IMG/VR virus record: IMGVR_UViG_3300028920_000001
Span: 248,001 to 312,000 of that record
Reading direction: 5' to 3' (one strand)
Length of the DNA stretch: 64,000 bases
A program made the translations under genes and the position numbers. This document shows positions 37,788-64,000 of this stretch, in pieces (position 1 is the stretch's first letter; every line of letters starts with the position of its first letter). The notes beneath the pieces are model-generated. The model made no database searches. It worked only from the letters and a program-made list of their open reading frames with translations, and was not told the DNA's origin.

Positions 37788-38060
37788 ATGAGTAAATTTA
37801 ATATCGAGGATCTTCGGTTTTCTTCCAGTTCAATTGATGATTTTTTCAAGAGTCCTGAACCCAGGGTTCATACTTCTTCGACGGTTGGGAAGGTCCGGGT
37901 TTCAGGACTTCATGAATTAGCCGGATTTAGTTTTATAGCTGAAGATAAACTGGTTAGGACTAGTAAACAAGACTTTTGGCAATTAGGTCAAGATGATGAT
38001 GGGTATTTCATCGAACGTTTGGTCAGTGACGATGATGGGCCGATCAAGGAAGAAGAATAA
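37788..38060 (+). CDS. Head-cluster hypothetical protein
   Basis: GGAGG SD; 90 aa. Confidence 0.7.
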   Translation: MSKFNIEDLRFSSSSIDDFFKSPEPRVHTSSTVGKVRVSGLHELAGFSFIAEDKLVRTSKQDFWQLGQDDDGYFIERLVSDDDGPIKEEE

Positions 38061-39184
38061 TGGACCTAGATAAGATTGCCCGTCGGATTAGTTCTTCTGG
38101 TCGCATTCGTACGGCTGGACGAATTGAATTCGTCCGTGATCAAGGTCCTCTTCGTCGTGATTTGCGTGCCAAGGGGTTTTCATTTAGCTCCGATACCTTA
38201 AAGGATTTAGCTAAAGTATTATGGGCTGCTGAACGAGCTCATAGTTATGGAATGGCTGCTCTAAGATTATTTTCTAAGACCCCTGCCTCTGAGATCAGTC
38301 CTGATGGATTATTGGGTGGCCGTGGGTATATTCAGCAAATTAAAGAGATGCGTTCTAATCTTTCTCAAGCTGTTGAAGTTCTATCTGCATTTTCAGATAC
38401 TATGCATGATGAAGTAAATGCAGATCATTGGGCTGGTGCTAGTGAATCAGAACCTGAAATTGAAGAGATTGTAGAACAAGCTGATGCTGTGAAAGCTGCC
38501 CCCGAGCAGTACGTTGAGGAGCAATTTGAACAGCAAGTTCCGGAAGCATCTGAAGATTTTAATCAGTTAACAAATCCTTCTCCGGAAGAAATGAATCCGG
38601 TAGTAGAAAATTCTGGCCCTCCGGATTGGGATTGGGGTCAAGAAGAGACTCAGATTCAGTCTTCGGAGAAAGCAATCCACCGCCCAAAAGATCCAAAGGA
38701 CTCTGATTTAAGAGTCCTGAAGGGCCAAATATCGAGCTCATCAATTCCAGTAGAGACTTTGCCTGGTCCCAGAGTGAAGCATATTGGGCCGGGTGAGGGT
38801 GATCAGGAATTCGGATATTATGCCGATGATGATGAGCGGCCAAGTGATGATCCTATCGGAGAAGGATTTCGTTTTCTAGAAGAAGTATATCAGGATTGGG
38901 ACATTGGAAAGGGTGGGGTGACTGGTTATGATAATCCCACCGATGGTGATACATCAAAATTTAAGCAATCTGCTCTTAAATTGGCAAATTATTCATGGCT
39001 TCCTGGTTCTCGAAATGAAAAATTAATGCCATACTATGATCCTAATGCTACTGATGAAGATGTTGAATGGATGAGAGCTCATGATCAGCCTGAGCCTCCG
39101 AAAAGCTTAGCGCCTCCTCCTGAAAATATGTTGCCTGATAAATTATGGGAGGCTCGACGTAATGCCGACATCTCTTCCGACTGA
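38060..39184 (+). CDS. Acidic putative internal head protein with MDLDKIARRISS leader
   Basis: Shared N-terminal motif; TAATG coupling. Confidence 0.65.
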   Translation: MDLDKIARRISSSGRIRTAGRIEFVRDQGPLRRDLRAKGFSFSSDTLKDLAKVLWAAERAHSYGMAALRLFSKTPASEISPDGLLGGRGYIQQIKEMRSNLSQAVEVLSAFSDTMHDEVNADHWAGASESEPEIEEIVEQADAVKAAPEQYVEEQFEQQVPEASEDFNQLTNPSPEEMNPVVENSGPPDWDWGQEETQIQSSEKAIHRPKDPKDSDLRVLKGQISSSSIPVETLPGPRVKHIGPGEGDQEFGYYADDDERPSDDPIGEGFRFLEEVYQDWDIGKGGVTGYDNPTDGDTSKFKQSALKLANYSWLPGSRNEKLMPYYDPNATDEDVEWMRAHDQPEPPKSLAPPPENMLPDKLWEARRNADISSD

Positions 39185-45495: not shown

Positions 45496-47319
45496 ATGGC
45501 AGCTAAGAAGAACGGGAATGGACGAGTTAGAACCGGTCAAATTCCGGTTCAGCACGTTAATATCCAGAAGGTTCCTTCCAAAAAGCTAACTAAATTAGAA
45601 AGGCAAGCCCGGAGAGAAGCTGCTCAATCTATTCGTGTGGCTGCTACCTGTGGTCCAATTGGTGGATCTGGATTAGGAAGCGGGGGTTTTGGTGGTTATG
45701 GGAATGCCGATATTGGATTAGCTAATTCCAATTTTTACAGTCCTCAGTTATCAACTGACTTTTTAGAGTTACCTCAATCTGAGCGTGAAAAACGCGAGTT
45801 ATTTAGATTTTGGTATACAACTCATCCAATCGTTGGGGCATCAATTGATTTTCATACTGATGTCCCGATGTCAAAAATTCGGTTGTCTCTGCCGAAGGGG
45901 AAAGATCACAAAAGAAATAAGCAGATCTTGCATTACTATCAAGAAATGTGCAGGCGACTGCGGCTTTTCCAAGTTCTCTACGATGCCACTCATGAATATT
46001 GGTTACATGGAAATGTGTTTATTTTCTGTGAAGACCAAGATATGGCACCAGAACTTCCTGATTCTATCTTCGTGAAAGAAGTGGAAGAAGAAATTGGTGA
46101 AGTTGATGCATTAGGAAACCCGACGGTTCGTAAAGAAAAGAAACAAGTAGAGAAATCTGAAAAAGAAAGAATGGATGCCATTCACGAATATGTGGCTGAT
46201 AAATATCAGGGATGGCAGCGTCTTCAAATTTTGCCGCCAGAGCAAGTTAAACTAGAAGTTTTTCAGTATACTAATAAAGTTAATATGGAACTTATCCCGA
46301 GCGAAAAAGATCGTTTGGTGGTATTGAGAGCTGAAGATCAAGGGGATCCGGAAGCTAGAAGAATTGCTGATGATATTCCAGAACAAATTAAAGAGAATTT
46401 ACTTAACGGTCAGCCTATTCCATTAAATACTAGTCCTTACGAAGATTATATTTGTTCTTCGTTTTGTTATCATTTATCGCACAAAAAATCATCTTATGAT
46501 GATCGTGGAATTTCAATTTTAGAGCGTTGTCTTCGTACTCTTCTCTATCAAGATAAACTTCGTCAAGCCCAGACTTCGATTGCCTCCCGTGCAATGACAC
46601 CAAAGCGCATTGTGTGGGCAGACAAAATGTCTCAAACAGATGTGGAAGATCTGCGAGATCAGGTTGATCAAGCTCTGATTGATCCGGATTTCACTATTAT
46701 TACTAATTTTGAGCTTCATTGGGATGAGATTGGAGCTCGAGATCGTCTTTTAGATTTAGGTACTGAATACGAGATTACAAATAAATTATTGTTTATCGGC
46801 CTTCGAATTACTGAGGCTATGTTAACAGGAGAAAGTACCTATTCCGGGGAGCGTATTCATCTGGACGTGATGAATACAATGTATTTGCTTTACCGTGAGA
46901 CAATAGCGGAATTCGTTGAGGAGCAGATTTTTGCACCGGTAGCCGAAAAGAAAGGTTTTTGGGAAATTGATGAATATGGGAATCGGGTTCTTCTTTATCC
47001 GAAGCTTCAGTTTACCCGACTGGCTCTTCGAGATAATGCTGAACTTCAGGATTTCATGTTTAATTTATATCAAAAAGGCTCATTGCCTATTTCATATATT
47101 TATGAACTTTTGAACATTGATGTTGATGACGCCCATTCGGAACTTCAGAAGGATGTATTTACTCTGAAGGATTCTCAGATGAATGAATTGGTCAGGAACC
47201 TTCTAGGTGCGGCCGGGGAAAAGCTTTTGGATGAGACCGATGTGATTGATAAGATAGTAAAAAGTCTTGGTCTTAAACATGAAAAGAAAGAAGGAGATCG
47301 TTTTGGTAAGGAAGAATAA
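45496..47319 (+). CDS. Portal protein
   Basis: Position after terL; HPIVGASIDFH, EYWLHGNVF, RGISILERC, LTGESTYS; 607 aa. Confidence 0.8.
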   Translation: MAAKKNGNGRVRTGQIPVQHVNIQKVPSKKLTKLERQARREAAQSIRVAATCGPIGGSGLGSGGFGGYGNADIGLANSNFYSPQLSTDFLELPQSEREKRELFRFWYTTHPIVGASIDFHTDVPMSKIRLSLPKGKDHKRNKQILHYYQEMCRRLRLFQVLYDATHEYWLHGNVFIFCEDQDMAPELPDSIFVKEVEEEIGEVDALGNPTVRKEKKQVEKSEKERMDAIHEYVADKYQGWQRLQILPPEQVKLEVFQYTNKVNMELIPSEKDRLVVLRAEDQGDPEARRIADDIPEQIKENLLNGQPIPLNTSPYEDYICSSFCYHLSHKKSSYDDRGISILERCLRTLLYQDKLRQAQTSIASRAMTPKRIVWADKMSQTDVEDLRDQVDQALIDPDFTIITNFELHWDEIGARDRLLDLGTEYEITNKLLFIGLRITEAMLTGESTYSGERIHLDVMNTMYLLYRETIAEFVEEQIFAPVAEKKGFWEIDEYGNRVLLYPKLQFTRLALRDNAELQDFMFNLYQKGSLPISYIYELLNIDVDDAHSELQKDVFTLKDSQMNELVRNLLGAAGEKLLDETDVIDKIVKSLGLKHEKKEGDRFGKEE

Positions 47320-47347: not shown

Positions 47348-49582
47348 ATGTTGCATCAAGGTGACAGCTCTTTGAGTCCTGCTGAAAAGGAGGATCAAGA
47401 GATTGAACATCGAATGAAGAGTATTAAGGAACGTCCTCATTCTAGAAAGTACAGATCTCGGCGTCCTGATCGTAGTAAACGTAGACAAAGGATGAAAATT
47501 GAAGATTCAGATATCCAAGCTCCTGTAAAGGCGGATCCAGATTTGTCAAAGATGGCTGCACGTATAGCAGTTGAACCCTTTGAAGATATTAGAGAACTCT
47601 TTAATAAGCGTGCTCAGTCGATTTTCAGGGCTTTATCTGAACTTTCTACTCCTTTAGCTGATGCATTTCATTCTGAAATGCATGAAAAATTCATAGATGT
47701 TTGGGATAATACTAAGAAACAACAACTACTATTACAGGAAATGGGAGAATTTAAAGATAAAATTAAGGGTGAAGTAAAAAAATACGGTAGGATATTAGGA
47801 AAAGCTGAACCGGCAGCTGTGGCAAGAATTATTGCTGATAATTGGCCTGATAAATCAGATTGGCAAACTCGAGCGGCCATAATTGGTGGAATAAGAAAAG
47901 CAGCAGACGATTCTAAGCTTCCTGAAGCTATTAAAGTCCCTTTTCTACGTCAAGACATTCCTAATGTATTAGCAGACAATAAAGCAATAAAGGCAATTCT
48001 TAAATCTAATGTGAAAAAATCCGGGGCTGATGAAAATGATTTATTCAGATTTGCTCAGTTAGTGGCTGCTTATCAAGTTTTATCTAAAAATCCGGATAAA
48101 ATTTCTACTGATCAATTAATGGCAGATGTTAAAAAATTGGCAGGATCATTAGACGAGCAGGTTTCTGAAGTTGTTGATCTTAATAACATTATGAATATTT
48201 GGACTAGTGCTTTAGGTCAGATTAAAGCCAAAGATACGAATATAGATTATAAACCAAATGATTATGATAAATTGTTGAAAAATCTGAGCAGTTTTTTTGA
48301 TCAAAGTAAATATGTGAATCCTGAACCTACCATGAAGGAGATGGAAAAACTATTGAAAGAAGAATTTAAAGATATTCCACCTGAAATGGAAGCAATGTTT
48401 AAGGGGTTCAAACGTGCAGCAACTTCTAATGAAACTCCAAGGATTAGGATAATGGCTAAAAAAGTCGTTGACTATGCTAAAGTGGCCGGTCGGGTTGCTA
48501 CCTATCATGGAATAATTGATCAAAGGGGCAATCCTACAGATCCTATTAATACCGGGTGGAAATCGTACGATAAAAGATATTTCGGTGAAGATAATTATAA
48601 ATCAATTGTTAAATATGCCAAAGAATTGCTAACTCAAGATTGGTTTAAATATGGATGGGGAGAGAAAAAGAGCGATGCTAGCCTTAGAGCCGCTCTTGAT
48701 GTAGCTATCTATGTGGGAGATTCCACACTTCATCAATCTAAGATTGATTCAGAGACATATAATATGCTCTTGAATCGATTGGCGGGTTGGGGATATGATT
48801 CATTTTCGGAGACTATTGTCTTTGAATCCGGAAAAGGCACCAAGAGGAGCGCTTCAATGAAGGCAGAAATCCAAAATTTAGTTCGGATTGCTAATGATAT
48901 CCGTCAGACTAATCCTACGGTGGCCTTTGAGATGTTAAAGAACATCAGAGGACTTACTGCTGGGCTTGGTATTGAGCCTGAGCTTGAGCCTGAGCCCCCT
49001 ACTACTTCTGGTGCTAAAGAAGATATTTCTAAGGCAATTGAAGAAACCATTTCTGAAATGTCCGGAGAGGAACCTGACAAGGTAGCTCAGGCTATTGCTG
49101 ATATTCTCGAAAAAGGCTTCGAGAAGATGCGTCCCAAGTCCCCTGAAGACCTTCAAACAGGCCTGGAAGAGCTCGTTGAAGCTGCTGGAGAGGTTATGGG
49201 CGGTCAGGCAGCAGTCGGATCTACTCTTGGGTACTTGGTTAGGGTGGCCTATAAAGCCCCTTCTCTTCGTCCCTTAATTCTGCCGGTGGTCGCGGCAGCT
49301 AAAAAAGGTAAGGGTAAAGGTAAAGCCCAGCCTAAGGGTAAAGGTAAAGCCCAGCCTAAGGGTAAAGGTAAGGCCCAGCCTAAGGGTAAAGGTAAAGCCC
49401 AGCCTAAGGGTAAAGGTAAAGCCCCACCATTTGGTGGTAAGAAGGCCCCACCATTTGGTGGTAAGAAGGCCCCACCATTTGGTAAGAAGGACGAAGAGGA
49501 AAAGAAGACCGCTAAAGGTAAAAAGACTTCTAAAGGTAAGAAGCGTCGGTCTTCTATTACCGCCACAGATCTGGAATGGTGA
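47348..49582 (+). CDS. Large putative internal head protein with Lys/Gly/Pro repeat tail
   Basis: Internal DLSKMAARIA; (KGKGKAQP)4 and GGKKAPPF repeats. Confidence 0.7.
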   Translation: MLHQGDSSLSPAEKEDQEIEHRMKSIKERPHSRKYRSRRPDRSKRRQRMKIEDSDIQAPVKADPDLSKMAARIAVEPFEDIRELFNKRAQSIFRALSELSTPLADAFHSEMHEKFIDVWDNTKKQQLLLQEMGEFKDKIKGEVKKYGRILGKAEPAAVARIIADNWPDKSDWQTRAAIIGGIRKAADDSKLPEAIKVPFLRQDIPNVLADNKAIKAILKSNVKKSGADENDLFRFAQLVAAYQVLSKNPDKISTDQLMADVKKLAGSLDEQVSEVVDLNNIMNIWTSALGQIKAKDTNIDYKPNDYDKLLKNLSSFFDQSKYVNPEPTMKEMEKLLKEEFKDIPPEMEAMFKGFKRAATSNETPRIRIMAKKVVDYAKVAGRVATYHGIIDQRGNPTDPINTGWKSYDKRYFGEDNYKSIVKYAKELLTQDWFKYGWGEKKSDASLRAALDVAIYVGDSTLHQSKIDSETYNMLLNRLAGWGYDSFSETIVFESGKGTKRSASMKAEIQNLVRIANDIRQTNPTVAFEMLKNIRGLTAGLGIEPELEPEPPTTSGAKEDISKAIEETISEMSGEEPDKVAQAIADILEKGFEKMRPKSPEDLQTGLEELVEAAGEVMGGQAAVGSTLGYLVRVAYKAPSLRPLILPVVAAAKKGKGKGKAQPKGKGKAQPKGKGKAQPKGKGKAQPKGKGKAPPFGGKKAPPFGGKKAPPFGKKDEEEKKTAKGKKTSKGKKRRSSITATDLEW
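49310..49490 (+). repeat. Coding 24-bp tandem repeats of two unit types
   Basis: aagggtaaaggtaaagcccagcct x4 (one substitution), a hybrid unit, then ggtggtaagaaggccccaccattt x2. Confidence 0.95.
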
Positions 49583-51413: not shown

Positions 51414-51464
51414 GGATAATATTACATCTCAGAATTTTGATAATGAATCATATGCAGGGAATTT

Positions 51465-54224
51465 ATGGCCTTCAAGCGTAAAGCAAATGCTATAGTTTCA
51501 AAATCTGACATCCATTTCGAAGAATGGATGGATGAAATTCGTAAAAATAATGAAGGGGCCGTTCCTAAGGATTACGTAGGACGAGTTGCTAAAGACGTTC
51601 TTCGTAAATGTGACCCGAATAAATATTTACTGTCTCATGCCACTATAGTCGCATCAGTTGATGTGTATGCCCCTCAGGGCGTCAAGACTGGCAAGATGAC
51701 AGATAATCGGGGAATGGAAATTGAGGTTAAGTGGCCTGAATATCGAATTAAGCCTGAATGTCAAGAATTGATCAATAATAATGGAGATGCTTGGGAAAGA
51801 TCTTTACTGTTATCGACATATCGGACCTTTATTGGGGCTCCGAACTATTTAGAGCATATACAAATCCCAGAATTATCCAAGGGATTTATTGTTGATGCGA
51901 TTGCTCGAGACCTTGGTAATACTTGTTATATTGATATTCTGGTTGGTACTGATCGCAAACATAATGTACTTATTCAGGATATTTTATCTAACAAGTTAAA
52001 TGCGATGAGTATGGGGTGCTTTGTTGCTGGTACTAAAGTTACTTTAGCAGATGGCTCCATGATTTCTATTGAAGATATTAGACCTGACATGCATGTTTTC
52101 TCTCAAAAGGGGAATGCTTGTCGAGTAAAGAATTTACAAATCCGAGAAAATCGATGGGGGATGTGTGAAATTAAGACAACTGGTCATTTTAAGTTGTCTT
52201 GCACTGATAATCATAAATGGTATGCAGTTCCTAGAGAAGAGGTTGAATATCGATCTACTTATAGGAAGAATCAAGTTCCGATAAATAAAGACTATGGATT
52301 TGAATATCGTGAAGCTGGTGATTTGAAAGTTGGTGATATAGTCGCTTTCCCGATTCCTCAAAAGGTTGTTGAGACTGATATATCAGAATCTGATGCTAGG
52401 TTAATCGGTATTTTTGCTGCTGATGGGTGGAAGTTTGAAAATACTCATGATTCTACTATTGGTTTAGGTTTTTGTTTGAATAGATTTGAATCTCAAACGA
52501 TTAATGACGTTGTTAATAAGATAGAACAAATCATGTGGTTGTCTGGGGAAAACCGGATGACTGCAAATGGGCATTCTTGTAATCGTTCGGTTAATTCTTC
52601 GATTCGGAGAAATGCTTGTTATTTAACATCAACTAGTCGTAAAGCTAGAAATCTGATTGATGAATTTGTGCATGGCAGAACAGCCAAGACTAAGATTTTT
52701 GATGAAGCGGTTTTGTGCTGGCCTAAGAATTTACAAAAGGCTCTTTTATCAGGTTATGTTGATGGGGATGGATCGGTTTCAACGGCTAAAAGGAAAACTA
52801 AGAATCTTCATATTAGTAGCAGAAATCCTGATTTGATTAATCAACTGAGGTTAATTGCAGCCCGTTGTGGATTGATTACTACTATAAGCAAAGCGAAAAG
52901 AAAAGGTACTAAATTAGTTCCCGGTGGAGCTGGGGTTGACTATCAGCTTCGATTTATGAATAATGGTGTTAATCAAATCAATGCTAATAAACTAAATGAT
53001 ATTGAAATTAAAGAAAGTCTAGTTGGTTTAAATAAACGATGGATCACTGATAAATATATTTATACTACTGTTGAATCAATTCGAAGATTTGATTATGATG
53101 GATTTGTATATGATATGGAGGTTGAGGGAGACCATTCATATACAGTGAATGGTATCGGGGTGTCTAATTGTGTGTCGTTATTTACGATTTGCACCCATTG
53201 TGGCAATGTAGCTATTGATGATACTCAATTTTGTAGTCATGTTGCATATGATGGAAAGAACTCTGAATTTATCGATGAGAATGGCCAGAAGCATCGACTA
53301 GCAGAATTGATTGGTCACACTACAGTTCCTAATAGTAATCAATTTATCGAGGCTTCTTGGGTTCGAGCTCCAGCATTTTCTGGTGCCCAGCGTAGGAATG
53401 TGTTAAACGCTGAGATGCCAACTATCGCTACTAAGATTGAAGCTGCCGGTAAGATTTATGAAATTAAGTGCAGCCAGGATGAATTGGAAGGTATTTTAAG
53501 AGCCGCGTCGATTGATCCGAAGTTAAATGTGTTGCATACAGCCCAAGATGAAGAGGATGATGCAGCCGGATCTGCTTTAGATGAGCTTATGGGTGGTGGG
53601 GACGAAGAAGCAAAGCCGGAAGATAAAGATGAAGAGGTTAAAGCTGAGGCTGAAAAAGATAAAGCTGAAGCTGAAACTGAAGGTGGGGAAGAAACTCCGG
53701 CAGAACCGGCTAAGCCCAAGATTGATAAATTGGTAGAAAAAGCTCAGGAACAGCTATTACAGACGATTGTTAATGATTTGAGTGAACGTTTAGCTCCTAA
53801 ACCTGAAGATGTTGGGGTTGCAATTCCCGGTATTGAGGAAGCTAGTTATAATGATAATCTAGTTCGAGCATCTCAATTTGATAAGAGGCTCCAATCTATA
53901 TTTAAGGATTATCCCAAGATTGTCAAATGGGCATCTCGGGTTAATAGATTGATTCATCTCGGTGGTCGAGATGCTATCAAGAGAGCAGGATATACTCCTT
54001 CAGATCTGATAGTTTTTTCATGGATAAATGATACTGTTAGATCTAAGGTTTATCCACCGGGTCTATATAAACTTGCCATGAAGATTGGTCCAATCAATTC
54101 TTTCCCTAGCGAAACTTCTTATTTCGCTGCGTGTCAAATTGATTTGAACCGTCCTCTGGTCCCTGGCGAGAAGAGATTCCTTCGGCAGAAGGGTCGAATC
54201 GCGTCGCTGTCCACCAAATTTTAA
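51465..54224 (+). CDS. Probable prohead maturation protease containing an intein
   Basis: NNNGDAW, YRTFIGAPNYLEH, SKGFIVDA, SMG|C, FIEASWV..PAF; lies before scaffold and MCP. Confidence 0.7.
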   Translation: MAFKRKANAIVSKSDIHFEEWMDEIRKNNEGAVPKDYVGRVAKDVLRKCDPNKYLLSHATIVASVDVYAPQGVKTGKMTDNRGMEIEVKWPEYRIKPECQELINNNGDAWERSLLLSTYRTFIGAPNYLEHIQIPELSKGFIVDAIARDLGNTCYIDILVGTDRKHNVLIQDILSNKLNAMSMGCFVAGTKVTLADGSMISIEDIRPDMHVFSQKGNACRVKNLQIRENRWGMCEIKTTGHFKLSCTDNHKWYAVPREEVEYRSTYRKNQVPINKDYGFEYREAGDLKVGDIVAFPIPQKVVETDISESDARLIGIFAADGWKFENTHDSTIGLGFCLNRFESQTINDVVNKIEQIMWLSGENRMTANGHSCNRSVNSSIRRNACYLTSTSRKARNLIDEFVHGRTAKTKIFDEAVLCWPKNLQKALLSGYVDGDGSVSTAKRKTKNLHISSRNPDLINQLRLIAARCGLITTISKAKRKGTKLVPGGAGVDYQLRFMNNGVNQINANKLNDIEIKESLVGLNKRWITDKYIYTTVESIRRFDYDGFVYDMEVEGDHSYTVNGIGVSNCVSLFTICTHCGNVAIDDTQFCSHVAYDGKNSEFIDENGQKHRLAELIGHTTVPNSNQFIEASWVRAPAFSGAQRRNVLNAEMPTIATKIEAAGKIYEIKCSQDELEGILRAASIDPKLNVLHTAQDEEDDAAGSALDELMGGGDEEAKPEDKDEEVKAEAEKDKAEAETEGGEETPAEPAKPKIDKLVEKAQEQLLQTIVNDLSERLAPKPEDVGVAIPGIEEASYNDNLVRASQFDKRLQSIFKDYPKIVKWASRVNRLIHLGGRDAIKRAGYTPSDLIVFSWINDTVRSKVYPPGLYKLAMKIGPINSFPSETSYFAACQIDLNRPLVPGEKRFLRQKGRIASLSTKF
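52017..53168 (+). mobile_element. Intein (384 aa) with LAGLIDADG endonuclease
   Basis: Starts CFVAGT; block B TDNHKW; LIGIFAADG and LLSGYVDGDG; ends VYDMEVEGDHSY..NGIGVSN, followed by Cys+1. Confidence 0.93.
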
Positions 54225-54266
54225 GGCATTGATAAGCGGATATCCTAATAGGAGGCATTTGTAACA

Positions 54267-55535
54267 ATGACTCGTCGTCGAAGCACTTGGCAGCAGCCGA
54301 AACCCACTTCTCATCAGGCAGCCACAAGTCGTAAAGCAGAAGATATTTACGACATGAATCAGGAGCATCCGCAACCCTCCGCAACGGAGTATGAGAGCGG
54401 AAGCCCCGATAGTTGGGCTGAAACTCCTACCACCAATAAGAACGTGGAAGGTGATTACGATGGTGATCACGTGAAGCGTAATGAGGTTGGCTTAGGTGAA
54501 CTCCGGGATGATACCTGGAGTCACAAAGATGCCGATCGGTGGAATGGTGGCGGCAAATATGACAATCAGGGTAAGTTAGCGGCCAAAAAGGCTTCGTTAG
54601 CTGAGCGGATTGCTCATGCCACGCTTCGAACCGATAATAAGGATCTGGTCACTCAGCAGGCGGCAGATTTAATGAATCTGCCAATTAAGGTCCTGGCTGC
54701 TACCGCTGAGCGGATGAATAAGGTATCCCCGGATGCCTTGGACAAAGAGCGGAAGTATCGTCGGGCTTTGGCTTGCTGCAAGCTGAGCGCCAACATTCTC
54801 GGTGAGACGGCCACTGAGGAGCAAGTTGAGCGGTTAGCACAGACCATCATGACGATCGATGATCCTACTCTCAAGTCGATTTTGAAGATATCGGCTGAGG
54901 TTCGGACAGCCGAGTGCAATTGTCCTCCTGGTGAGTGCACTTGTGACGACAAGACTGCTGGTGAGTTAAAGCCTCCGATGGGAGAAGGTGAAGAAGAATC
55001 CGAAGAGGAGACTGCAGCTGCTAAGTGCATGGGTGCTGACGACGAGAAGAAGCTCGAGGAAATGCTTCCTGAGCAAAGAGAAGAGACAGGATGTCTGGTT
55101 CCGGTCGCACCTGCTCCAGCACCTGCTTTGACCGAGATGTTTGAAGAGGCTCCGGCCCCAGCCGCACCGGTCATGTCTCCTCCAGTTCCGGCGGGACCTG
55201 TTGCCCCCGCGACTGCTACTGATTCTCCGGAAATCACTTTCGATGATGAATCGGACATCACCTTTGATGAGCCGGAGGAGCCTTCCGCCATGACTGCTAC
55301 TGATCAGCAGGAATTGTCGGCTCTCTTTGATGATGACGAAGAGGTTCAGGCCCAGCGTCAAATTCAGGCATCTGAGCAAGAGCAGAAAGCTCGTGAGCTC
55401 GGTAACTATGGTCCACACCCGGCTGCACGTACTGCCTCTGATGGTGCCAAGAAGCTTGGTGCTGTGACTCGCACTGCGTCCAATAAGGATGAAGACGAAC
55501 TTGCGGCTCTTTGGGCCGGAAACGAACTCGCATAA
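54267..55535 (+). CDS. Probable capsid scaffolding protein
   Basis: Acidic, Pro/Ala-rich, many R/K-T-A sites; GGAGG SD; between protease and capsid genes. Confidence 0.65.
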   Translation: MTRRRSTWQQPKPTSHQAATSRKAEDIYDMNQEHPQPSATEYESGSPDSWAETPTTNKNVEGDYDGDHVKRNEVGLGELRDDTWSHKDADRWNGGGKYDNQGKLAAKKASLAERIAHATLRTDNKDLVTQQAADLMNLPIKVLAATAERMNKVSPDALDKERKYRRALACCKLSANILGETATEEQVERLAQTIMTIDDPTLKSILKISAEVRTAECNCPPGECTCDDKTAGELKPPMGEGEEESEEETAAAKCMGADDEKKLEEMLPEQREETGCLVPVAPAPAPALTEMFEEAPAPAAPVMSPPVPAGPVAPATATDSPEITFDDESDITFDEPEEPSAMTATDQQELSALFDDDEEVQAQRQIQASEQEQKARELGNYGPHPAARTASDGAKKLGAVTRTASNKDEDELAALWAGNELA

Positions 55536-55748
55536 TGACTACGGTTCTACCTAACGGGGAACCACCACAAATACCAGAGCAAATATATAAACTGGGTTCA
55601 GTAACCGGAGGTTTTGGGTCAGATTTGATTTGATGATATTGGAAGGAGAGACGATTTCGCGGTTCGCCGGACTTGAAATTATCTCCTGAAGAGATTCGAA
55701 GAATACAGATTTGATTCTAAACTCAACGAAACTGGAGAATTATTAATC

Positions 55749-56423: not shown

Positions 56424-56456
56424 GGGCGCTAGAAGGAATGAAAGGGCAAATTAGTC

Positions 56457-57350
56457 ATGGCTAACCCTTACGGCGTTCAGGTTGTTGACAACACGATCAA
56501 GGAGAGGATCGCTGAGAAGTGGATCAGCACGTCTCCTGGTCGCAAGCGCATTGCCGCTTCAATGATCCAACCGCTCCGCGAGCGGAGGGATTACTCATCT
56601 GTTGGACGTAAGACCTTCTTGGTCGAGCAGATTCCTGATGGAGCTCTCGCGATTTACGACAAGGATCCGGACGTTACGGCGTACGTGATCGGTGAAGAGG
56701 GTAACAGCATCACGGCCGTAATGAAGCCGCGTCGCGTTATCTTCCCGTTGTTCGAGATTGCGGCTCTCCCCAAGGCTCCTCTGACTCAGATCAAGGAGCG
56801 TCGGTACGACCTGCTCAAGCGTATGCAGGACCTCGGTAAGGCTCAGGTCCAGGCTGCTGAGGACGATCGCGTTTTCAGCATCATGGATGCGATTGCCATT
56901 AACGGGTTCGATTCGCTTGCGGGTCAGACCAACCCGGATATTCCGGTGGTGGCGCCGATTTCGCCGGCCATCCTTGCGGATGCGTTCGCCGAGATCGAGT
57001 TCCACGATCTGCGTGTTGCTCGCGTTTACATGAACGCGAAGGATTACGCAGACATCCGGAAGTTCGGCCGCGACGTGCTCGACATCGAGAGTCAGGCCGT
57101 CCTGTGGAAGACTGGAATGATGGCTACTGGTTGGAACGCCCAGTTCATCGTTTCCCGTCTCGTGCCGCAGGGTGTGGTCTACTGTTGCTGTGAGCCCGAG
57201 ATGTTCGGACGGATTCCGGTTCGTACCGAGCTCACGGTTCTGAGCGCGGATAACCCTGAGGAACGTACCATTGGTTTCTCGATGTTCGAGAATCTGGGCA
57301 TCGGCGCCTATAATCCTAGGGGTCTGGTGCGCCTCATTGTGACGCGGTAA
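56457..57350 (+). CDS. Major capsid protein (HK97-like fold)
   Basis: 297 aa; QAAEDDRVF, VYMNAKDYADIRKF, VSRLVPQG, ENLGIGAYNPRG; strong codon bias; position. Confidence 0.85.
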   Translation: MANPYGVQVVDNTIKERIAEKWISTSPGRKRIAASMIQPLRERRDYSSVGRKTFLVEQIPDGALAIYDKDPDVTAYVIGEEGNSITAVMKPRRVIFPLFEIAALPKAPLTQIKERRYDLLKRMQDLGKAQVQAAEDDRVFSIMDAIAINGFDSLAGQTNPDIPVVAPISPAILADAFAEIEFHDLRVARVYMNAKDYADIRKFGRDVLDIESQAVLWKTGMMATGWNAQFIVSRLVPQGVVYCCCEPEMFGRIPVRTELTVLSADNPEERTIGFSMFENLGIGAYNPRGLVRLIVTR

Positions 57351-57355
57351 CGCAC

Positions 57356-57419
57356 TTCCAACGTCCTTTTCGGCCCGGTTGGCTATTTCAGGCCTTCCGG
57401 GCCGAAGAGTGTTTGGGAA
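57356..57419 (+). terminator. Long GC-rich hairpin ending the capsid operon
   Basis: ttcggcccgg / ccgggccgaa core stem with imperfect extension; weak U-tract. Confidence 0.6.
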
Positions 57420-57445
57420 TGTAAAGAAAAGCCGTAAGAAAATAC

Positions 57446-57475
57446 TTGACTTTTGTTATTAATGTTTGTTATACT
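57446..57475 (+). promoter_or_regulatory. Near-consensus sigma-70 promoter, leaderless
   Basis: TTGACT-N18-TATACT with extended TG, 5 nt before ATG 57481. Confidence 0.75.
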
Positions 57476-57480
57476 TATTA

Positions 57481-57630
57481 ATGTTTGTGATTGAAGAAAC
57501 TAAAATATGCTATCAATGCGGAGGTGAATTTCCGATATCTGTAGATGAGATTGATCCGGAAACTCAGACATCTACGGCTGAGCATATGGAACAAGGTGAT
57601 GACATTTTATCTATGATTCAAGAAGCCTAA
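57481..57630 (+). CDS. 49-aa protein with CxxC, absent from the ORF track
   Basis: MFVIEETKICYQCGGEF...ILSMIQEA; directly behind the promoter. Confidence 0.55.
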   Translation: MFVIEETKICYQCGGEFPISVDEIDPETQTSTAEHMEQGDDILSMIQEA

Positions 57631-57756
57631 CTTTGGAATTTTTTCATATTGTATAATTCGTTGTGTATACCCCTGGGTAAAATTAGTCCCTCAAGATGCT
57701 TGGTCGAAGCACTAGGCTTTGAATCCTCCATTTAATTAGATTTCGGAGGATCTATC

Positions 57757-58302
57757 ATGAAAGTTGGGGAATTAATTTCTGAGCTTCAAAAATTTGATTC
57801 TGAAGCTGAAGTAGGTTGTGGTCTTTCCAAGCTTTCAGGATGGGCTCAGAAAATTGATGATGTTTTAATGTCTGAAGAGGGCATTGTTTTTATTAATATG
57901 GGGCGTGAAACTATTGGTGAAAATGAATTAACGCTTGCGTCTACCAAAGTAAATCTTTCTAAAATTGCTTCGAGAATTGCCGCTGTTGAAGGATTGGAAG
58001 ATCCTTGGACTGATATTTCAGAAGAAGTTAAGCGGATTCTTGAAAGTAAAGGCGCAGATCTTGAAGAAGATCAACGTGCTGCAGAACAATTTGTTGATCT
58101 AATTTTGAATTATGCTGATATGAGTCTTGGTCCTCATTCTTCAGAGGATATGGCCCCCATTGAAGCATTTGAGGCCGGGCTGCGTATGAAGCAGCCTGTG
58201 TATCATACAGTAGATCCATTTAATCCTGAAGATGAGCATTATTATTTTGAGGAAGCTTCCAAGGATGCATTTTTAAGGGCTCTTCAGGGAGAAGCTGAGT
58301 GA
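57757..58302 (+). CDS. Leader-array protein 1 (internal VNLSKIASRIAA)
   Basis: GGAGG SD; motif at 57949-57984. Confidence 0.75.
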   Translation: MKVGELISELQKFDSEAEVGCGLSKLSGWAQKIDDVLMSEEGIVFINMGRETIGENELTLASTKVNLSKIASRIAAVEGLEDPWTDISEEVKRILESKGADLEEDQRAAEQFVDLILNYADMSLGPHSSEDMAPIEAFEAGLRMKQPVYHTVDPFNPEDEHYYFEEASKDAFLRALQGEAE

Positions 58303-58619
58303 TGAATCTCTCCAAGATTGCCTCGAGAATCGCTGCGGCTAATACTGCATACCGAGTTATTACTGATGAGCCGGTAGGCATTACTATCGGATTTGAACCT
58401 AAAGGTTTTGAATATGATGAATTTCAAATTCAATCTGATGATGGTGGAGATAATGTTTATATTCAAGAAGATGGAGAAACTTTAATCATTTCTAAGGACC
58501 CTAATCTTAATGGTGAATTTCCTGAACCTGATTTATTAATCTGGCGCACTCCAGATGAATTTAAGAGTTGGATTGCAGAGATGGATGAAGAGGAAGAGAT
58601 GGATGAAAAGGAAGAATAA
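58302..58619 (+). CDS. Leader-array protein 2 (MNLSKIASRIAA)
   Basis: TGATG coupling; acidic. Confidence 0.75.
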   Translation: MNLSKIASRIAAANTAYRVITDEPVGITIGFEPKGFEYDEFQIQSDDGGDNVYIQEDGETLIISKDPNLNGEFPEPDLLIWRTPDEFKSWIAEMDEEEEMDEKEE

Positions 58620-59305
58620 TGAATCTTTTTAGGATTGCCTCTCGAATAGCCAATATTACTAATTTTAAATCATTTAAATATGATATTGGTGATGAACGAG
58701 CTTTTGGACGGTTAGAATTTGAAGCTGATACCCCTAAGGGTGCTCTTAAGTATGAAGCTAACATAAATACTGATGGTGAGATGGAAGACGAAAAAGCAAT
58801 TTTAGACGGCGAACCTGTTGAATTGGATTTGGGTATTAATCTTCCTCATTATTATAAAATTGACCCTGAGTTTTGGACTTACACGGAGGAAGAGGCGGAA
58901 GAACATAGGGAAGAACAGCCTTCGGATGAAGAAGCTAAACAAATTGTGACCGAAGCTATAGATTATTGGATTAGCTCAGGGGCTGAGACTGGTAAGCCCT
59001 ATCAAGAAGGGGATGAACCTAGGTTGCCTCATAAAGTTTCTGAATCACAAATGAATGCTTGGAATGAGATGAGGAGTCAAATCAATAAAGCTCTTAGATC
59101 TGTTCAAAAGGATGATATCGAAAGTGGAATTGAGTCGCTGGAGGCGGCTAAAGAAAAAGCTTCATCGAATATGATTAAAAAAATTGATCAAGCGATTGAG
59201 ATGGTAAAATCAGATTCTGAAAAATCAAAAGCAGTGATATATAATTTATGGAATCGAGGAGTTGGTGGTTCCATTACAGATTGGATTTCTGAATCTATCG
59301 TATAA
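58619..59305 (+). CDS. Leader-array protein 3 (MNLFRIASRIAN)
   Basis: TAATG coupling; acidic. Confidence 0.75.
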   Translation: MNLFRIASRIANITNFKSFKYDIGDERAFGRLEFEADTPKGALKYEANINTDGEMEDEKAILDGEPVELDLGINLPHYYKIDPEFWTYTEEEAEEHREEQPSDEEAKQIVTEAIDYWISSGAETGKPYQEGDEPRLPHKVSESQMNAWNEMRSQINKALRSVQKDDIESGIESLEAAKEKASSNMIKKIDQAIEMVKSDSEKSKAVIYNLWNRGVGGSITDWISESIV

Positions 59306-59313
59306 TTGGAGGA

Positions 59314-59559
59314 ATGATGGACTTTAATAGAATCGCTTCTCGAGTTGCTGCCAATACCAATCAATGGCTTTGGATTAGTGAGTCATGGGAAGGTGGTAGA
59401 ATAATTCAAGCTGCTGATGATGGGGCAGCTTATGAAATCGCTATTCAAAGTAGAATGGATGATTCAAATCAATCTCGGGAAGAAGCGGAAGAATGGTTTG
59501 AAAAGAATGATCAATTGGTTCCAATCCTAAATTTACCTCCATTAACTGGAGCTGAGTAA
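59314..59559 (+). CDS. Leader-array protein 4 (MDFNRIASRVAA)
   Basis: GGAGG SD; acidic. Confidence 0.75.
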   Translation: MMDFNRIASRVAANTNQWLWISESWEGGRIIQAADDGAAYEIAIQSRMDDSNQSREEAEEWFEKNDQLVPILNLPPLTGAE

Positions 59560-59912
59560 TGAATTTTTCTAAGATTGCTTCCCGAATTGCAGCTGATAAA
59601 TCTCAACATACTATTATGTTTGAATTTGCAGAGCCGGATGAAGAAACAATAGTCTATACTGCTGATTTATCAAATGAAGAATTAAATCAACTTAAACAAT
59701 TATTTACGGAGTTACAAGAAAAAGCTGGTGATAATTGGGGAGACACTTTAGCTGCTTGGTCAATTGATTCTGCTGATTCTGCTGAAGCTGTTGAGCATTT
59801 CACTAATTTTCCAGATTTATTAAATGATATCGCTTTAAATTCTCGTTATAATGAAACTGACACTCCTGGTGAATTTTATGGTGGTTCAATCGCTTTATTG
59901 GAAGGAAGATGA
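59559..59912 (+). CDS. Leader-array protein 5 (MNFSKIASRIAA)
   Basis: TAATG coupling. Confidence 0.75.
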   Translation: MNFSKIASRIAADKSQHTIMFEFAEPDEETIVYTADLSNEELNQLKQLFTELQEKAGDNWGDTLAAWSIDSADSAEAVEHFTNFPDLLNDIALNSRYNETDTPGEFYGGSIALLEGR

Positions 59913-60229
59913 TGAATTTTTCTAGAATCGCCTCCCGTATTGCTGCCACTGAAGATGAGATAACTCTCCTCAGTAAGCAAGATGTGATTAATCTAGTATC
60001 TCGGACTTTAGAAGTGGAGCCAGCCTCCATCGAATTTAAGACTTTTGAATTTACGGTTCATGGCGGTTCCTATGGCGGCCCAACTTCAATTGGGGCTCGA
60101 GGCGGTGGTGAAGTTGACGGCCGCGATTTTTATTTCTCAATTCAGGGTCATGTTTGGGCCGATAAAGAAGGCGTGAAATACGATCCGAATCCTGACAATA
60201 ATCCTATGGAAATTATGTGGGAGGATTGA
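59909..60229 (+). CDS. Leader-array protein 6 (MNFSRIASRIAA)
   Basis: ATGATG overlap with the previous stop. Confidence 0.75.
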   Translation: MMNFSRIASRIAATEDEITLLSKQDVINLVSRTLEVEPASIEFKTFEFTVHGGSYGGPTSIGARGGGEVDGRDFYFSIQGHVWADKEGVKYDPNPDNNPMEIMWED

Positions 60230-60591
60230 TGGACTTTAATAAAATTGCTTCCCGGATTGCTGCAAGGGAGGTAAATATCCAATATGATCTTGATTTTGAT
60301 TGGGATGAAGAGTTATCTTCTGCTCGTCAAAGTGGAACAGTTAGTATTTCTCTTGGTCCAACTGATGAAGAAATTATAGATTACTTAGAAAGTGATGAAG
60401 GTGATTCTATTTTGAATAATCTATCTTCTGATCCAAATGGATATGTTTCATTAGTTCCTCAGACTATCAATGGTCAGTCTGCTGATATTTCCGGTAATGA
60501 TTATTTATCATTCACTAGCAGGGCTATTATAAATTATCTTCAGTCTAATCCTGGAGTTCGGGAATTTAAAGTTACGGGTCTGATTGAGTAG
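60229..60591 (+). CDS. Leader-array protein 7 (MDFNKIASRIAA)
   Basis: TGATG coupling; start moved to 60229. Confidence 0.75.
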   Translation: MDFNKIASRIAAREVNIQYDLDFDWDEELSSARQSGTVSISLGPTDEEIIDYLESDEGDSILNNLSSDPNGYVSLVPQTINGQSADISGNDYLSFTSRAIINYLQSNPGVREFKVTGLIE

Positions 60592-60600
60592 CAAGCATGA

Positions 60601-61257
60601 TTAACGATATCGGCGCATAGTGATTCGGGCTGAAGGTTTATTTATTGCTACTTCTCCGTAAGTAAATTTACGATCTAAAAATTCTTTAAAAATTTCTTTC
60701 ATGCTATGATGTTTAAAGAAGGACATATCAAATCCTTCGCCTAATTTATACTGAACATGACCTACTTGGTTACCTAAGTATCCGGCGACTTCTACAAATC
60801 TATCCCCATCTTCTTTATAGGTGGTGAATTTCCAGCGGGGATACATGAAATTGTTGAATACTAACCGGGCGCCTGGAGGCATGATTGCCTCCATAGTGGC
60901 CGCCAATTTAGCCATATCCAAATAGCCAAGTGCTTGTCGAATGACGCAAAGTGAAGGTTTTGGGGATGGTGGGTAAATTTCAGGATTTTGAACATCTCCG
61001 GTAATACAAACTATTTCCGGATTTGGACAACGTGGATTGAGGTCGATTAGTACAGGCTGATGTTCAGCTCCTCTTTTCAGCGCTTCTAAAGCTACAACTC
61101 CAGTTCCACCACAGAGATCATATAGAACATCGGTTTTGGGATTGTAGCGACCAAAATCAAGTAGGGAGCCGGGATTTTTTAACCATCGGATATAAAGACG
61201 GTCATACTTGTCGGTGGTACATTTAAACATAGACATTATGAATGTGTCCGTTTTCAT
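60601..61257 (-). CDS. Class I SAM-dependent methyltransferase
   Basis: Motif I YDLCGGTG; LIDLN; GDV; RQALGYL..PPGARLVF. Confidence 0.75.
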   Translation of the reverse strand: MKTDTFIMSMFKCTTDKYDRLYIRWLKNPGSLLDFGRYNPKTDVLYDLCGGTGVVALEALKRGAEHQPVLIDLNPRCPNPEIVCITGDVQNPEIYPPSPKPSLCVIRQALGYLDMAKLAATMEAIMPPGARLVFNNFMYPRWKFTTYKEDGDRFVEVAGYLGNQVGHVQYKLGEGFDMSFFKHHSMKEIFKEFLDRKFTYGEVAINKPSARITMRRYR

Positions 61258-62287: not shown

Positions 62288-62316
62288 ATTTAGATATACA
62301 ACGGATATCTAAATAT

Positions 62317-63326: not shown

Positions 63327-63512
63327 ATGGTTAAGCCTAGTGATGTTGCAAATCGTCTTCGTCAGATCGCAGCCGCGATTGATAATTCGAAATCTCCGAA
63401 ACGGGAACTAGTTGCTGAGGATTTGCAGGAAGTTCTTAGCGTTCTTGAGAATGCGGAGCCCCCGGCAGCAGAGCCCCCGGCAGCAGAGCCCCCGGCACCC
63501 CCGGCCGAATAA
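63327..63512 (+). CDS. Small protein with VANRLRQIAAA motif and EPPAA repeats
   Basis: AGGAG SD; 15-bp repeats. Confidence 0.7.
   Translation: MVKPSDVANRLRQIAAAIDNSKSPKRELVAEDLQEVLSVLENAEPPAAEPPAAEPPAPPAE
63456..63497 (+). repeat. Coding 15-bp tandem repeat
   Basis: gagcccccggcagca x2 plus a partial third copy. Confidence 0.9.
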
Positions 63513-63519
63513 GTCCTGC

Positions 63520-63843
63520 ATGGACTTGGCCAGGATTGCCAGGCGATTGGTCATCGCCAGGCAAATCGCGTATGGCGATGAAGGGACTGGTCTAACTTGG
63601 CAGGCGGATTTCCCTGCGACAACTCCTTGTGAGCACTGCGGGGCAGATGCTCGTCTTGCTTTCACCCTATTGGAAGAGGGTGAGGATGACGAATATATTT
63701 GTAATTTACATGATAATGATCACGAAGAAGGTGGGGAAGGTTTTTGGCTTCATGATGCCGGAGCTTTTGCCTTGTATATTTGTACTGATATAGATTGTGT
63801 AACTAAAACGGGTGGCACTACTACACTTTGGAATCAAGCCTGA
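63520..63843 (+). CDS. Leader-family protein (MDLARIARRLV) with Cys/His cluster
   Basis: Start moved to ATG 63520; CEHC..C..H..HD..C..C. Confidence 0.7.
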   Translation: MDLARIARRLVIARQIAYGDEGTGLTWQADFPATTPCEHCGADARLAFTLLEEGEDDEYICNLHDNDHEEGGEGFWLHDAGAFALYICTDIDCVTKTGGTTTLWNQA

Positions 63844-64000
63844 TGGATTTTATTAAGATGGCCGCTCGAATTTCAGGGTTAGCTCCTGAATGGTACTCGA
63901 GCGGACGTGAATTTTTAAATAATCAAACACCAATAGATTCTGGTAAAACTCCGGCTGAGGAAAAAGCTGGTACTTCTCTTCCCGGGGATAATCCTGAAGG
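63843..64000 (+). CDS. Leader-family protein (MDFIKMAARISG), 3'-partial
   Basis: TGATG coupling; runs off the window. Confidence 0.65.
   Translation, partial: MDFIKMAARISGLAPEWYSSGREFLNNQTPIDSGKTPAEEKAGTSLPGDNPE

What the first reader, a model, noticed from the sequence alone, without database searches (positions are those of the whole stretch)
57757..60591. Array of unrelated acidic proteins sharing a 12-aa leader: candidate capsid-loading cargo system
Seen: seven consecutive ORFs, mostly coupled by TGATG/TAATG overlaps, carry M-[ND]-[LF]-x-[KR]-I-A-S-R-[IV]-A-[AN] (at the N-terminus in six, internal in the first). After the motif the proteins are dissimilar and very acidic. Codons in the motif vary synonymously (TCG/TCT/TCC; AGA/CGA/CGT/CGG), so the peptide appears to be what is conserved, not the DNA. 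Variants start ORFs 38060, 63520 and 63843, occur near the start of 21188, lie inside 47348 (DLSKMAARIA), and sit near the C-termini of 12281 and 44825. Known: T4 internal proteins use a short N-terminal capsid-targeting sequence that the prohead protease removes, and are injected with the DNA. Inference: a portable signal loads a variable set of proteins (anti-defence factors, DNA mimics) into the head. The array lies just after the capsid operon.
Basis: partly seen in the sequence, partly recalled or inferred. Interest (0 to 1): 0.88.

Follow-up and report, generated by a model that had tools for sequence, protein, structure and literature searches.

The report
Portable leader peptide in huge phage
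Seven neighbouring small acidic proteins of an uncultivated 427-kb phage, and about 30 unrelated proteins in its relatives, carry the same 11-residue helix, most likely a docking tag that brings varied cargo to one shared partner, possibly the assembling capsid.

Summary
Seven consecutive + strand genes (57757-60591), just after the major capsid gene, carry M-[ND]-[LF]-x-[KR]-I-A-S-R-[IV]-A. It sits at Met1 in six and at residue 66 in the first. Codons differ synonymously while the peptide stays fixed, so selection acts on the peptide. The bodies show no detectable similarity and all have pI 4.1-4.5.

The window is part of a 427-kb IMG/VR contig, a distant relative of Bacillus phage G. The same leader heads about 30 distinct proteins in relatives whose capsid protein is 84-93% identical, and it shows no excess in bacterial genomes. 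One tagged body elsewhere is a recognisable HAD/NIF phosphatase.

A second portable module of about 40 residues sits next to many leader genes. It carries Dps, pentapeptide-repeat and LRV bodies.

A leader-like motif also lies in a conserved protein encoded between portal and prohead protease.

That the leader is a portable docking peptide with one shared partner is well supported. That the partner is the prohead, as with the T4 capsid-targeting sequence, is plausible but untested (about 0.4). There are no virion data, no cleavage motif, and many leader genes lie far from head genes. I rate it a new variant of a known kind.

The parts
57757..58302 (+). Array gene 1 (181 aa, pI 4.3). A fusion: a small N-terminal domain (aa 1-40, phrog_22847/5861), then an internal leader at aa 66-77 (nt 57949-57984), then an acidic body.
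58302..58619 (+). Array gene 2 (105 aa, pI 4.1), leader at Met1. Its start overlaps the stop of gene 1 (TGATG).
58619..59305 (+). Array gene 3 (228 aa, pI 4.5), leader at Met1, TAATG overlap. Weak orthologue at L090:6108.
59317..59559 (+). Array gene 4 (80 aa, pI 4.2), leader at Met1 (Val at position 10). The only junction without an overlap.
59559..59912 (+). Array gene 5 (117 aa, pI 4.1), leader at Met1, TAATG overlap.
59912..60229 (+). Array gene 6 (105 aa, pI 4.5), leader at Met1, TGATG overlap.
60229..60591 (+). Array gene 7 (120 aa, pI 4.1), leader at Met1, TGATG overlap. The array ends against convergent genes.
47348..49582 (+). Conserved 744-aa all-alpha protein encoded between portal and protease. 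A leader-like motif at aa 65-74 (nt 47540-47569) sits in a low-confidence N-terminal tail. Orthologues keep a DLS...IA-x-R-[IV]-A element at this place.
38060..39184 (+). 374-aa ORF that starts with a leader variant (15.7 bits). No family match.
63327..63512 (+). Member of the second portable module (about 40 aa, N- or C-terminal in relatives).
63520..63843 (+). 107-aa ORF that starts with a weak leader variant (5.3 bits).
63843..64000 (+). ORF with a leader variant at Met1 (12.7 bits). It runs off the window and is 123 aa in L001.
57366..57409 (+). Very stable hairpin just after the capsid gene stop (fold of 57351-57425: -41.9 kcal/mol, z -6.1). Terminator-like or stabiliser; it separates the capsid gene from the array.
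56457..57350 (+). Major capsid protein (HK97 type). 36% identical to phage G gp27 and 84-93% to the clade that carries the leader.
51465..54224 (+). Prohead protease interrupted by a 384-aa intein (nt 52017-53168).
54267..55535 (+). Putative scaffold (422 aa, acidic, low-complexity C-terminal half), assigned by position only.
45496..47319 (+). Portal protein.

Best explanation
The array encodes seven unrelated, small, very acidic accessory proteins, translationally coupled. Each is tagged with the same 11-residue amphipathic helix, M-[ND]-[LF]-x-[KR]-I-A-[SAT]-R-[IV]-A, with a hydrophobic face at positions 3, 6, 7, 10 and 11 and basic residues at 5 and 9.

Shown: the tag is kept by purifying selection on the peptide. 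It is portable, occurring on about 30 unrelated bodies in one clade of 180-436 kb phages. It tends to occur in tandem arrays and next to a second portable module of about 40 residues. It changes in concert within a genome.

Inferred: the tag is a docking peptide for one shared, highly conserved, phage-encoded partner. That partner is most likely a component of the assembling prohead (scaffold or core, the inner face of the capsid protein, or the portal). The tagged proteins would then be loaded into the head and delivered with the DNA, as T4 internal proteins are through their capsid-targeting sequence. Whether the prohead protease then removes the tag is open.
For: - Selection acts on the peptide: 78 synonymous against 6 non-synonymous codon pairs in the core.
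- 30 of 31 distinct leaders sit at Met1.
- The back-translated pattern hits 19 stretches of IMG/VR, almost all on contigs that carry the same capsid clade. In 596 Gb of bacterial genomes it gives only about 21 hits, mostly internal to ORFs or not in an ORF.
- Bodies are unrelated, and some have different recognisable folds.
- A second array of three leader genes lies 200 kb away in the same genome.
- The motif recurs in a conserved protein encoded between portal and protease, as an isolated helix in a low-confidence N-terminal tail. It also recurs in a conserved 454-aa protein of the structural region.
- Several relatives have genes carrying the second module inserted inside the head module.
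- 4 of 13 leader clusters on large contigs lie within 10 kb of the capsid gene, against about 7% expected (my arithmetic).
- All three Q5 leaders among 35 fall in one genome, on different proteins, one of which has R5 orthologues elsewhere. This points to one shared partner per genome.
- The leader core is nearly invariant across genomes whose capsid protein is 84-93% identical, while scaffold and the 744-aa protein are only 27-60% identical.
- A prohead protease is present.
- Precedent: diverse T4 internal proteins share only a capsid-targeting sequence (PMC3012670, PMC7411985).
Against: - There is no virion proteomics for any member, and no cultured relative has the leader: phage G, Tunturi_5 and LR745208 lack it near their capsid genes.
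- 9 of 13 clusters are more than 10 kb from the capsid gene, some among non-structural genes.
- No conserved residue or cleavage motif follows position 11.
- The bodies are strongly acidic. To my knowledge T4 internal proteins are basic, which suits sitting beside packed DNA.
- A strong hairpin and a promoter-like site lie between the capsid gene and the array, so co-expression with head genes is not shown.
- In the Q5 genome, no private substitution appears in the capsid, decoration-like or scaffold proteins, and none at an acidic column of the protease C-domain.
- The structure models of the 744-aa protein and the protease gave no informative fold match.
Confidence: 0.4

Rival explanations
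1. The leader docks the proteins onto a hub that is not the capsid. This could be a universally conserved host machine (RNA polymerase, a chaperone, a protease adaptor) or a non-structural phage complex. The proteins would be intracellular take-over or anti-defence effectors that are never packaged.
For: - Most leader clusters lie far from head genes, some among accessory genes such as phosphoesterase and macro-domain-like neighbours in L082.
- Small acidic proteins are typical of early phage effectors (general knowledge).
- A hairpin and a promoter-like site lie upstream of the array.
- The Q5 genome has no compensating change in capsid or scaffold.
Against: - The motif is embedded in a conserved head-module protein, and genes with the sister module are inserted in head modules.
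- Leader clusters are enriched near the capsid gene.
- The leader is invariant across phages of very different GC content, hence probably different hosts. This fits a conserved phage partner better than a host-specific one.
Confidence: 0.27
2. The leader is an N-terminal degradation or turnover signal. It would resemble the polar-hydrophobic-x-basic-hydrophobic class of ClpX recognition signals that I recall, and would give all tagged proteins a short, programmed lifetime.
For: - The leader sits at Met1 in 30 of 31 cases.
- Residues 2-6 read polar, hydrophobic, x, basic, hydrophobic. The link to ClpX signals rests on my own knowledge and was not tested.
Against: - Conservation extends through residues 7-11 (A7 and A11 invariant, R9 nearly so), beyond what a degron of that class needs.
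- The motif also works, or at least persists, internally in three proteins at aa 55-66.
- The sister module occurs at C-termini too.
Confidence: 0.1
3. The seven genes are tandem paralogues of one ancestral gene. Their bodies have diverged beyond recognition, and the N-terminal helix is simply the slowest-evolving part, for example an oligomerisation helix.
For: - The genes are arranged in tandem and the leaders pair up (genes 1/2, 5/6, 4/7).
- The second array in L082 does contain real paralogues that share a further L-x-L-x-G-P-F element.
- None of the seven bodies has a fold assignment.
Against: - No body similarity is detectable at all, even within the leader pairs (Z at most -0.7).
- Body lengths range from 68 to 216 aa.
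- Elsewhere in the clade the same leader heads a NIF phosphatase (above Pfam's cut-off), a weak kinase-like (APH) match and other families.
- An orthologous body family carries leaders that follow the genome, not the family.
Confidence: 0.1
4. The conserved element acts at the nucleic-acid level, as a translation-initiation enhancer, a recombination linker for cassette exchange or an RNA-binding site. The peptide would be incidental.
For: It sits at the start of genes that are translationally coupled.
Against: - Third codon positions vary freely. Ser is read by TCG/TCT/TCC and Arg by AGA/CGA/CGT/CGG, which differ at first positions too.
- The invariant alignment columns lie at first and second codon positions.
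- The same peptide is encoded in GC-rich relatives with different codons.
Confidence: 0.02

Closest known systems
T4 capsid-targeting sequence (CTS) of internal proteins IPI, IPII, IPIII and Alt
   Same: A short N-terminal peptide of about 10-20 residues is the only thing shared by otherwise diverse, non-essential proteins (PMC3012670, PMC7411985). To my knowledge the loci also vary between close relatives, as seen here. A prohead protease is present in both systems.
   Different: The capsid lineage is different (relatives of phage G, HK97-type 297-aa capsid protein). The protease was not assignable to the T4 gp21 family. No conserved cleavage site follows the leader. The bodies are very acidic rather than basic. 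Packaging and cleavage are untested. I did not align the leader with the T4 peptide.
N-terminal propeptides of ejection and head proteins in giant phages SPN3US and phiKZ
   Same: Many head proteins of a giant phage carry N-terminal extensions thought to target them into the prohead (PMC7411985, PMC10052503).
   Different: Those propeptides are long (111-130 residues) and end at an A-x-E site cut by the protease (PMC7411985). I know of no shared motif among them. Here the tag is an 11-residue conserved helix with no Glu-type site.
Encapsulin cargo-loading peptides (own knowledge; not checked in the paper library)
   Same: Short terminal peptides dock varied enzymes, classically ferritin-like proteins, onto the inside of an HK97-fold shell without cleavage. 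Here a Dps-family protein of the same genome carries the sister module, and that module occurs at either terminus.
   Different: This shell is a true phage capsid with terminase, portal and tail genes. The consensus differs. Cargo genes are scattered over the genome. Binding to the shell is untested.
Scaffolding-protein coat-binding helix-turn-helix of phage P22 (own knowledge)
   Same: A small basic helical element at a protein terminus binds the inner capsid surface. The 40-residue sister module looks like two helices joined by a turn, with conserved Arg and Lys.
   Different: In P22 the element belongs to one essential scaffold protein, not to a family of variable accessory proteins. No sequence similarity was tested.

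Membership tests
T4-type capsid-targeting-sequence proteins | A short N-terminal peptide shared by otherwise unrelated proteins | tested here: met
   30 of 31 leaders sit at Met1, the bodies are unrelated, and some have different Pfam folds.
T4-type capsid-targeting-sequence proteins | Sequence similarity of the peptide to the T4 CTS | not tested
   The T4 peptide was not fetched or typed. The capsid and protease lineages differ, so homology is not expected.
T4-type capsid-targeting-sequence proteins | The peptide ends at a conserved prohead-protease cleavage site and is removed | tested here: inconclusive
   Positions 12 onward are not conserved and no Glu-type site is present. A protease gene exists, but its specificity is unknown and the model of its catalytic domain was poor.
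T4-type capsid-targeting-sequence proteins | The proteins are present in the mature head and are ejected with the DNA | not testable with these tools
   There is no cultured member and no proteomics. The nearest cultured relatives lack the leader near their capsid genes.
Encapsulin cargo-loading peptide systems | A shell that packages protein only, with cargo genes in the shell operon | tested here: not met
   Terminase, portal, protease and capsid genes of a tailed phage are present. Cargo genes are scattered.
Encapsulin cargo-loading peptide systems | A terminal docking peptide on enzymatic cargo such as ferritin-like proteins | tested here: inconclusive
   Dps, pentapeptide-repeat and LRV bodies carry the sister module, and a NIF phosphatase carries the leader. 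Docking to the shell is untested.
Tandem paralogue family | Detectable similarity or a common fold of the bodies | tested here: not met
   No BLAST pair has E<1. Shuffle-calibrated local alignments give a best Z of 3.0 among 21 pairs. Folds of the seven bodies were not predicted, so a common fold is not excluded.
N-terminal degron | The signal must be at the free N-terminus and confers instability | tested here: inconclusive
   The position at Met1 is the rule, but three proteins carry the motif internally. Stability is not testable here.

The most novel reading that the evidence does not exclude
A true tailed-phage capsid uses encapsulin-style cargo loading. Two interchangeable docking modules would be involved: an 11-residue helix, and a 40-residue two-helix module that works at either terminus. 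They would bind the conserved inner surface of the HK97-fold shell or its portal without being cleaved. They would load a changeable set of enzymes and effectors (Dps, HAD phosphatase, pentapeptide-repeat protein, small acidic proteins) for delivery with the DNA. This would be a living link between phage capsids and encapsulins, and a sequence rule for reading the injected proteome of uncultivated huge phages.
Probability: 0.12. Interest if true: 0.85.

Novelty: new variant of a known kind. Interest (0 to 1): 0.62.

Why it matters
If the leader is a head-targeting tag, the packaged and injected protein set of a whole clade of uncultivated 180-436 kb phages could be read directly from sequence. 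That set appears to include enzymes not known as phage cargo. The tag would also be a compact handle for loading foreign proteins into very large capsids.

Even if the partner is not the capsid, the leader is a clear case of a portable, clade-specific short linear motif that ties many unrelated accessory proteins to one hub. This gives a direct experimental entry point, a peptide pull-down, into the biology of phages that have no cultured host.

Tried and rejected
- A word-indexed protein search restricted to residues 1-40 of array gene 5 found only the gene itself.
- A full HMMER search of 1.84 billion representatives with a leader profile gave only 6 hits at E<=0.001. Four are clade proteins and two are repeat proteins. 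A 12-residue motif is too short for a census there.
- AlphaFold models of the 744-aa protein (pLDDT 64) and of an intein-free protease (pLDDT 54, catalytic part poor) gave no Foldseek match at E<=0.001 in PDB. The 744-aa model also had none in BFVD. Neither protein gave a Pfam hit, and the protease gave no PDB sequence hit.
- The 744-aa protein is not detectably related to the Tunturi_5 'DNA ejection protein' that occupies a comparable position upstream of the protease.
- I looked for a shared promoter motif. There are too few intergenic regions, and sigma-70-like sites are not above the shuffle level.
- I looked for a compensating private substitution in the capsid, decoration-like, scaffold and protease C-domain proteins of the one genome whose leaders all have Gln at position 5. 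None was found at an acidic column; the only private changes were two in the protease C-domain, P to S and N to L.
- Resemblances considered and dropped as not significant:
  - the A-x-E-R-[IVL]-A-R stretch of the scaffold, which is no better conserved than its surroundings;
  - the R-I-A-A-S stretch of the capsid N-arm and the C-terminal K-G-R-I-A-S of the protease, both low or negative matrix scores;
  - similarity of the 40-residue module to residues 501-540 of the 744-aa protein, which the module HMM does not find.
A DNA pattern was used instead.
- A megablast of 51000-62500 against GenBank phages gave no match.
Full report
**What is there**

The window carries, on the + strand, a tailed-phage head module:
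- large terminase, 42853-44799;
- portal, 45496-47319;
- a 744-aa protein, 47348-49582;
- two small conserved genes;
- a prohead protease, 51465-54224;
- a 422-aa acidic protein in the scaffold position, 54267-55535;
- a 224-aa protein;
- the major capsid protein, 56457-57350.

A very stable hairpin follows the capsid gene (57366-57409; -41.9 kcal/mol, z -6.1). A 400-base spacer comes next. Then come seven co-oriented genes, 57757-60591, which end against convergent genes.

Each of the seven proteins carries [ND]-[LF]-x-[KR]-I-A-S-R-[IV]-A.
- In six the motif starts right after the initiator Met (starts at 58302, 58619, 59317, 59559, 59912, 60229). In the first gene it lies at residues 66-77, behind a small domain of its own, with no start codon nearby.
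- Five of six junctions are one-base stop/start overlaps, so the genes are probably translationally coupled.
- The back-translated pattern matches six times in the window and never in 100 shuffles. A position matrix gives nine hits of at least 12 bits where 0.025 are expected.
- In the six core codons, 78 gene pairs differ synonymously and 6 non-synonymously. Nucleotide identity falls from 0.71 in the leader to 0.34 and 0.30 on either side. The peptide is what is conserved.
- The bodies show no similarity: no BLAST pair has E<1, and the best shuffle-calibrated Z is 3.0 among 21 pairs.
- All seven have pI 4.1-4.5, against 14% of the other ORFs below 4.6.
- None of the seven bodies matches Pfam or PHROGs. 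The only hit is the small N-terminal domain of gene 1.

63520 and 21188 are weak. The C-termini of 12281 and 44825 are not supported.

**Where it comes from**

The window is identical to part of IMG/VR contig IMGVR_UViG_3300028920_000001, which is 426,960 bp long. Its capsid, portal and protease proteins are distant homologues of Bacillus phage G gp27, gp14 and gp19. Its capsid and protease also match Tunturiibacter phage Tunturi_5. About 65 of the 80 IMG/VR loci carry a capsid protein 84-93% identical to this one. Many sit on contigs of 180-436 kb with very different GC content.

**The leader is a clade-wide portable tag**

- A degenerate DNA pattern for the leader hits 19 stretches of IMG/VR. 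Almost all are on contigs that also hold this capsid clade.
- The same pattern gives 21 stretches in 596 Gb of bacterial and archaeal genomes. Most of these lie inside long ORFs or in no ORF, so there is no excess.
- In 1.2 Mb of clade DNA I count 30 distinct leader proteins of 53-291 aa, mostly acidic. In a slightly earlier count, 30 of 31 leaders sit at Met1.
- The window's own genome has a second array of three leader genes about 200 kb away.
- Some bodies are recognisable and unrelated to one another. One is a NIF/FCP1-type HAD phosphatase (1.4e-8). A pair has a weak kinase-like (APH) match. One family of about 245 aa is found in three genomes.
- Phage G, Tunturi_5 and the 485-kb record LR745208 have no leader within 20 kb of their capsid genes.

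**A second module**

Next to many leader genes, and in several relatives inside the head module, lie genes that begin with a conserved module of about 40 residues. The consensus begins M-K-P-S-Q and continues through L-R-R-I-A and N-P-D-R. A few genes end with the module instead.
- There are 37 distinct copies in the DNA held, and a DNA pattern for it again hits only clade contigs.
- Its bodies include a Dps-family protein of the window's own genome (PDB 1JIG, 6e-8; Pfam Ferritin), a pentapeptide-repeat protein (1.8e-77) and an LRV-repeat protein (3.6e-22).
- The window's member is 63327-63512. Two genes with leader variants follow it.

**Links to the head**

- The 744-aa protein encoded between portal and protease carries the only other strong match to the leader in the window (23 bits, residues 65-74). 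Its orthologues keep a D-L-S ... I-A-x-R-[IV]-A element at the same place, after an acidic helix and an Arg-rich stretch.
- In the AlphaFold model that element is a short isolated helix in a low-confidence N-terminal tail, as expected of a docking motif.
- A conserved 454-aa protein of the structural region has a similar internal motif at about residue 57.
- Of 13 leader clusters on large contigs, 4 lie within 10 kb of the capsid gene, where about 7% would be expected (coordinates; my arithmetic).
- The three leaders with Gln instead of Lys/Arg at position 5 all belong to one genome. They sit on different proteins, and one of these has orthologues with Arg elsewhere. Among 35 leaders, the chance of that grouping is about 1.5e-4. 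This fits one shared partner per genome.
- The leader core is almost invariant across genomes in which only the capsid protein is comparably conserved.

**Interpretation**

What is shown: a peptide-level, portable, clade-specific tag on unrelated accessory proteins, with signs of a common partner.

What is inferred: the partner is part of the prohead, so the tagged proteins are loaded into the head, as in the T4 system. There, diverse internal proteins share only a capsid-targeting sequence that the prohead protease removes (PMC3012670, PMC7411985). I put this at about 0.4.

Against it:
- there are no particle data;
- there is no cleavage motif after the leader;
- the cargo is strongly acidic;
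- most clusters lie far from head genes;
- a hairpin and a promoter-like site lie ahead of the array;
- the Gln-5 genome shows no compensating change in capsid or scaffold.

The main rival is docking to a non-capsid hub, with the proteins acting as unpackaged effectors (about 0.27). A degron, and a family of paralogues diverged beyond recognition, are each about 0.1. A nucleic-acid-level element is excluded by the codon data.

**Comparison and novelty**

The logic is that of the T4 capsid-targeting sequence and, more loosely, of the propeptides of giant phages such as SPN3US. The sister module on a Dps protein also recalls encapsulin cargo peptides.

Membership in the T4 family is not established. 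Only the first defining feature, a shared short N-terminal peptide on unrelated proteins, is met. Cleavage and packaging are untested, and the capsid lineage is different.

I found no description of this motif in the paper library. I therefore rate it a new variant of a known kind, with interest 0.62.

Noticed in passing
window 52017-53168 (within 51465-54224): The prohead protease gene is split by a 384-aa class-1 intein with a LAGLIDADG homing-endonuclease domain (Cys1 ... Asn, then Cys+1). Intein-free orthologues of about 517 aa exist in relatives, and other relatives carry an intein of similar size.
   Followed up: partly
window 54000-57400 against its flanks: The head genes are 51% GC in a genome that is otherwise 34-42% GC. 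The capsid protein is 84-93% identical across contigs of very different GC content. This suggests unusually strong constraint on the head genes or their exchange between phages.
   Followed up: no
window 57366-57409: A very stable hairpin lies directly after the capsid gene stop (-41.9 kcal/mol, z -6.1) without a clear U-tract. It may be a terminator, an attenuator or an mRNA stabiliser.
   Followed up: partly
window 63327-63512; L082:2637-3188; L085:1918-2688; L044:3563-4315: A second portable module of about 40 residues occurs at N- or C-termini of unrelated bodies (Dps, pentapeptide repeats, LRV repeats). It is clade-specific and often lies next to leader genes or inside head modules.
   Followed up: partly
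L091:3664-3822 (- strand): A 53-aa ORF begins with the leader, and its R-I-A-S core is then repeated six times in tandem.
   Followed up: no
P0004: A 541-aa protein that looks like a bacterial response regulator carries about eight tandem units of 17 residues built around L-D-Q-I-A-S-R-V. That is the same core as the leader. Its origin and meaning are unknown.
   Followed up: no
window 57757-58302; L099:2-262 (- strand): The small N-terminal domain of array gene 1 (phrog_22847/5861) occurs after the leader in a relative's protein, so the domain order around the leader is swapped.
   Followed up: partly
window 47348-49582, C-terminal 90 residues: The 744-aa head-module protein ends in a very basic, low-confidence tail with repeated P-P-F-G-G-K-K units. 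Its N-terminus has an Arg-rich stretch conserved in orthologues.
   Followed up: no
window 60601-62287 (- strand): The convergent genes after the array encode a methyltransferase-like protein and a protein with a DFP (CoaB-like) domain. These may be DNA-modification functions.
   Followed up: no
window 35181-36827: A 548-aa ORF matches families annotated as HNH or homing endonuclease and as Mom-like DNA modification protein.
   Followed up: no
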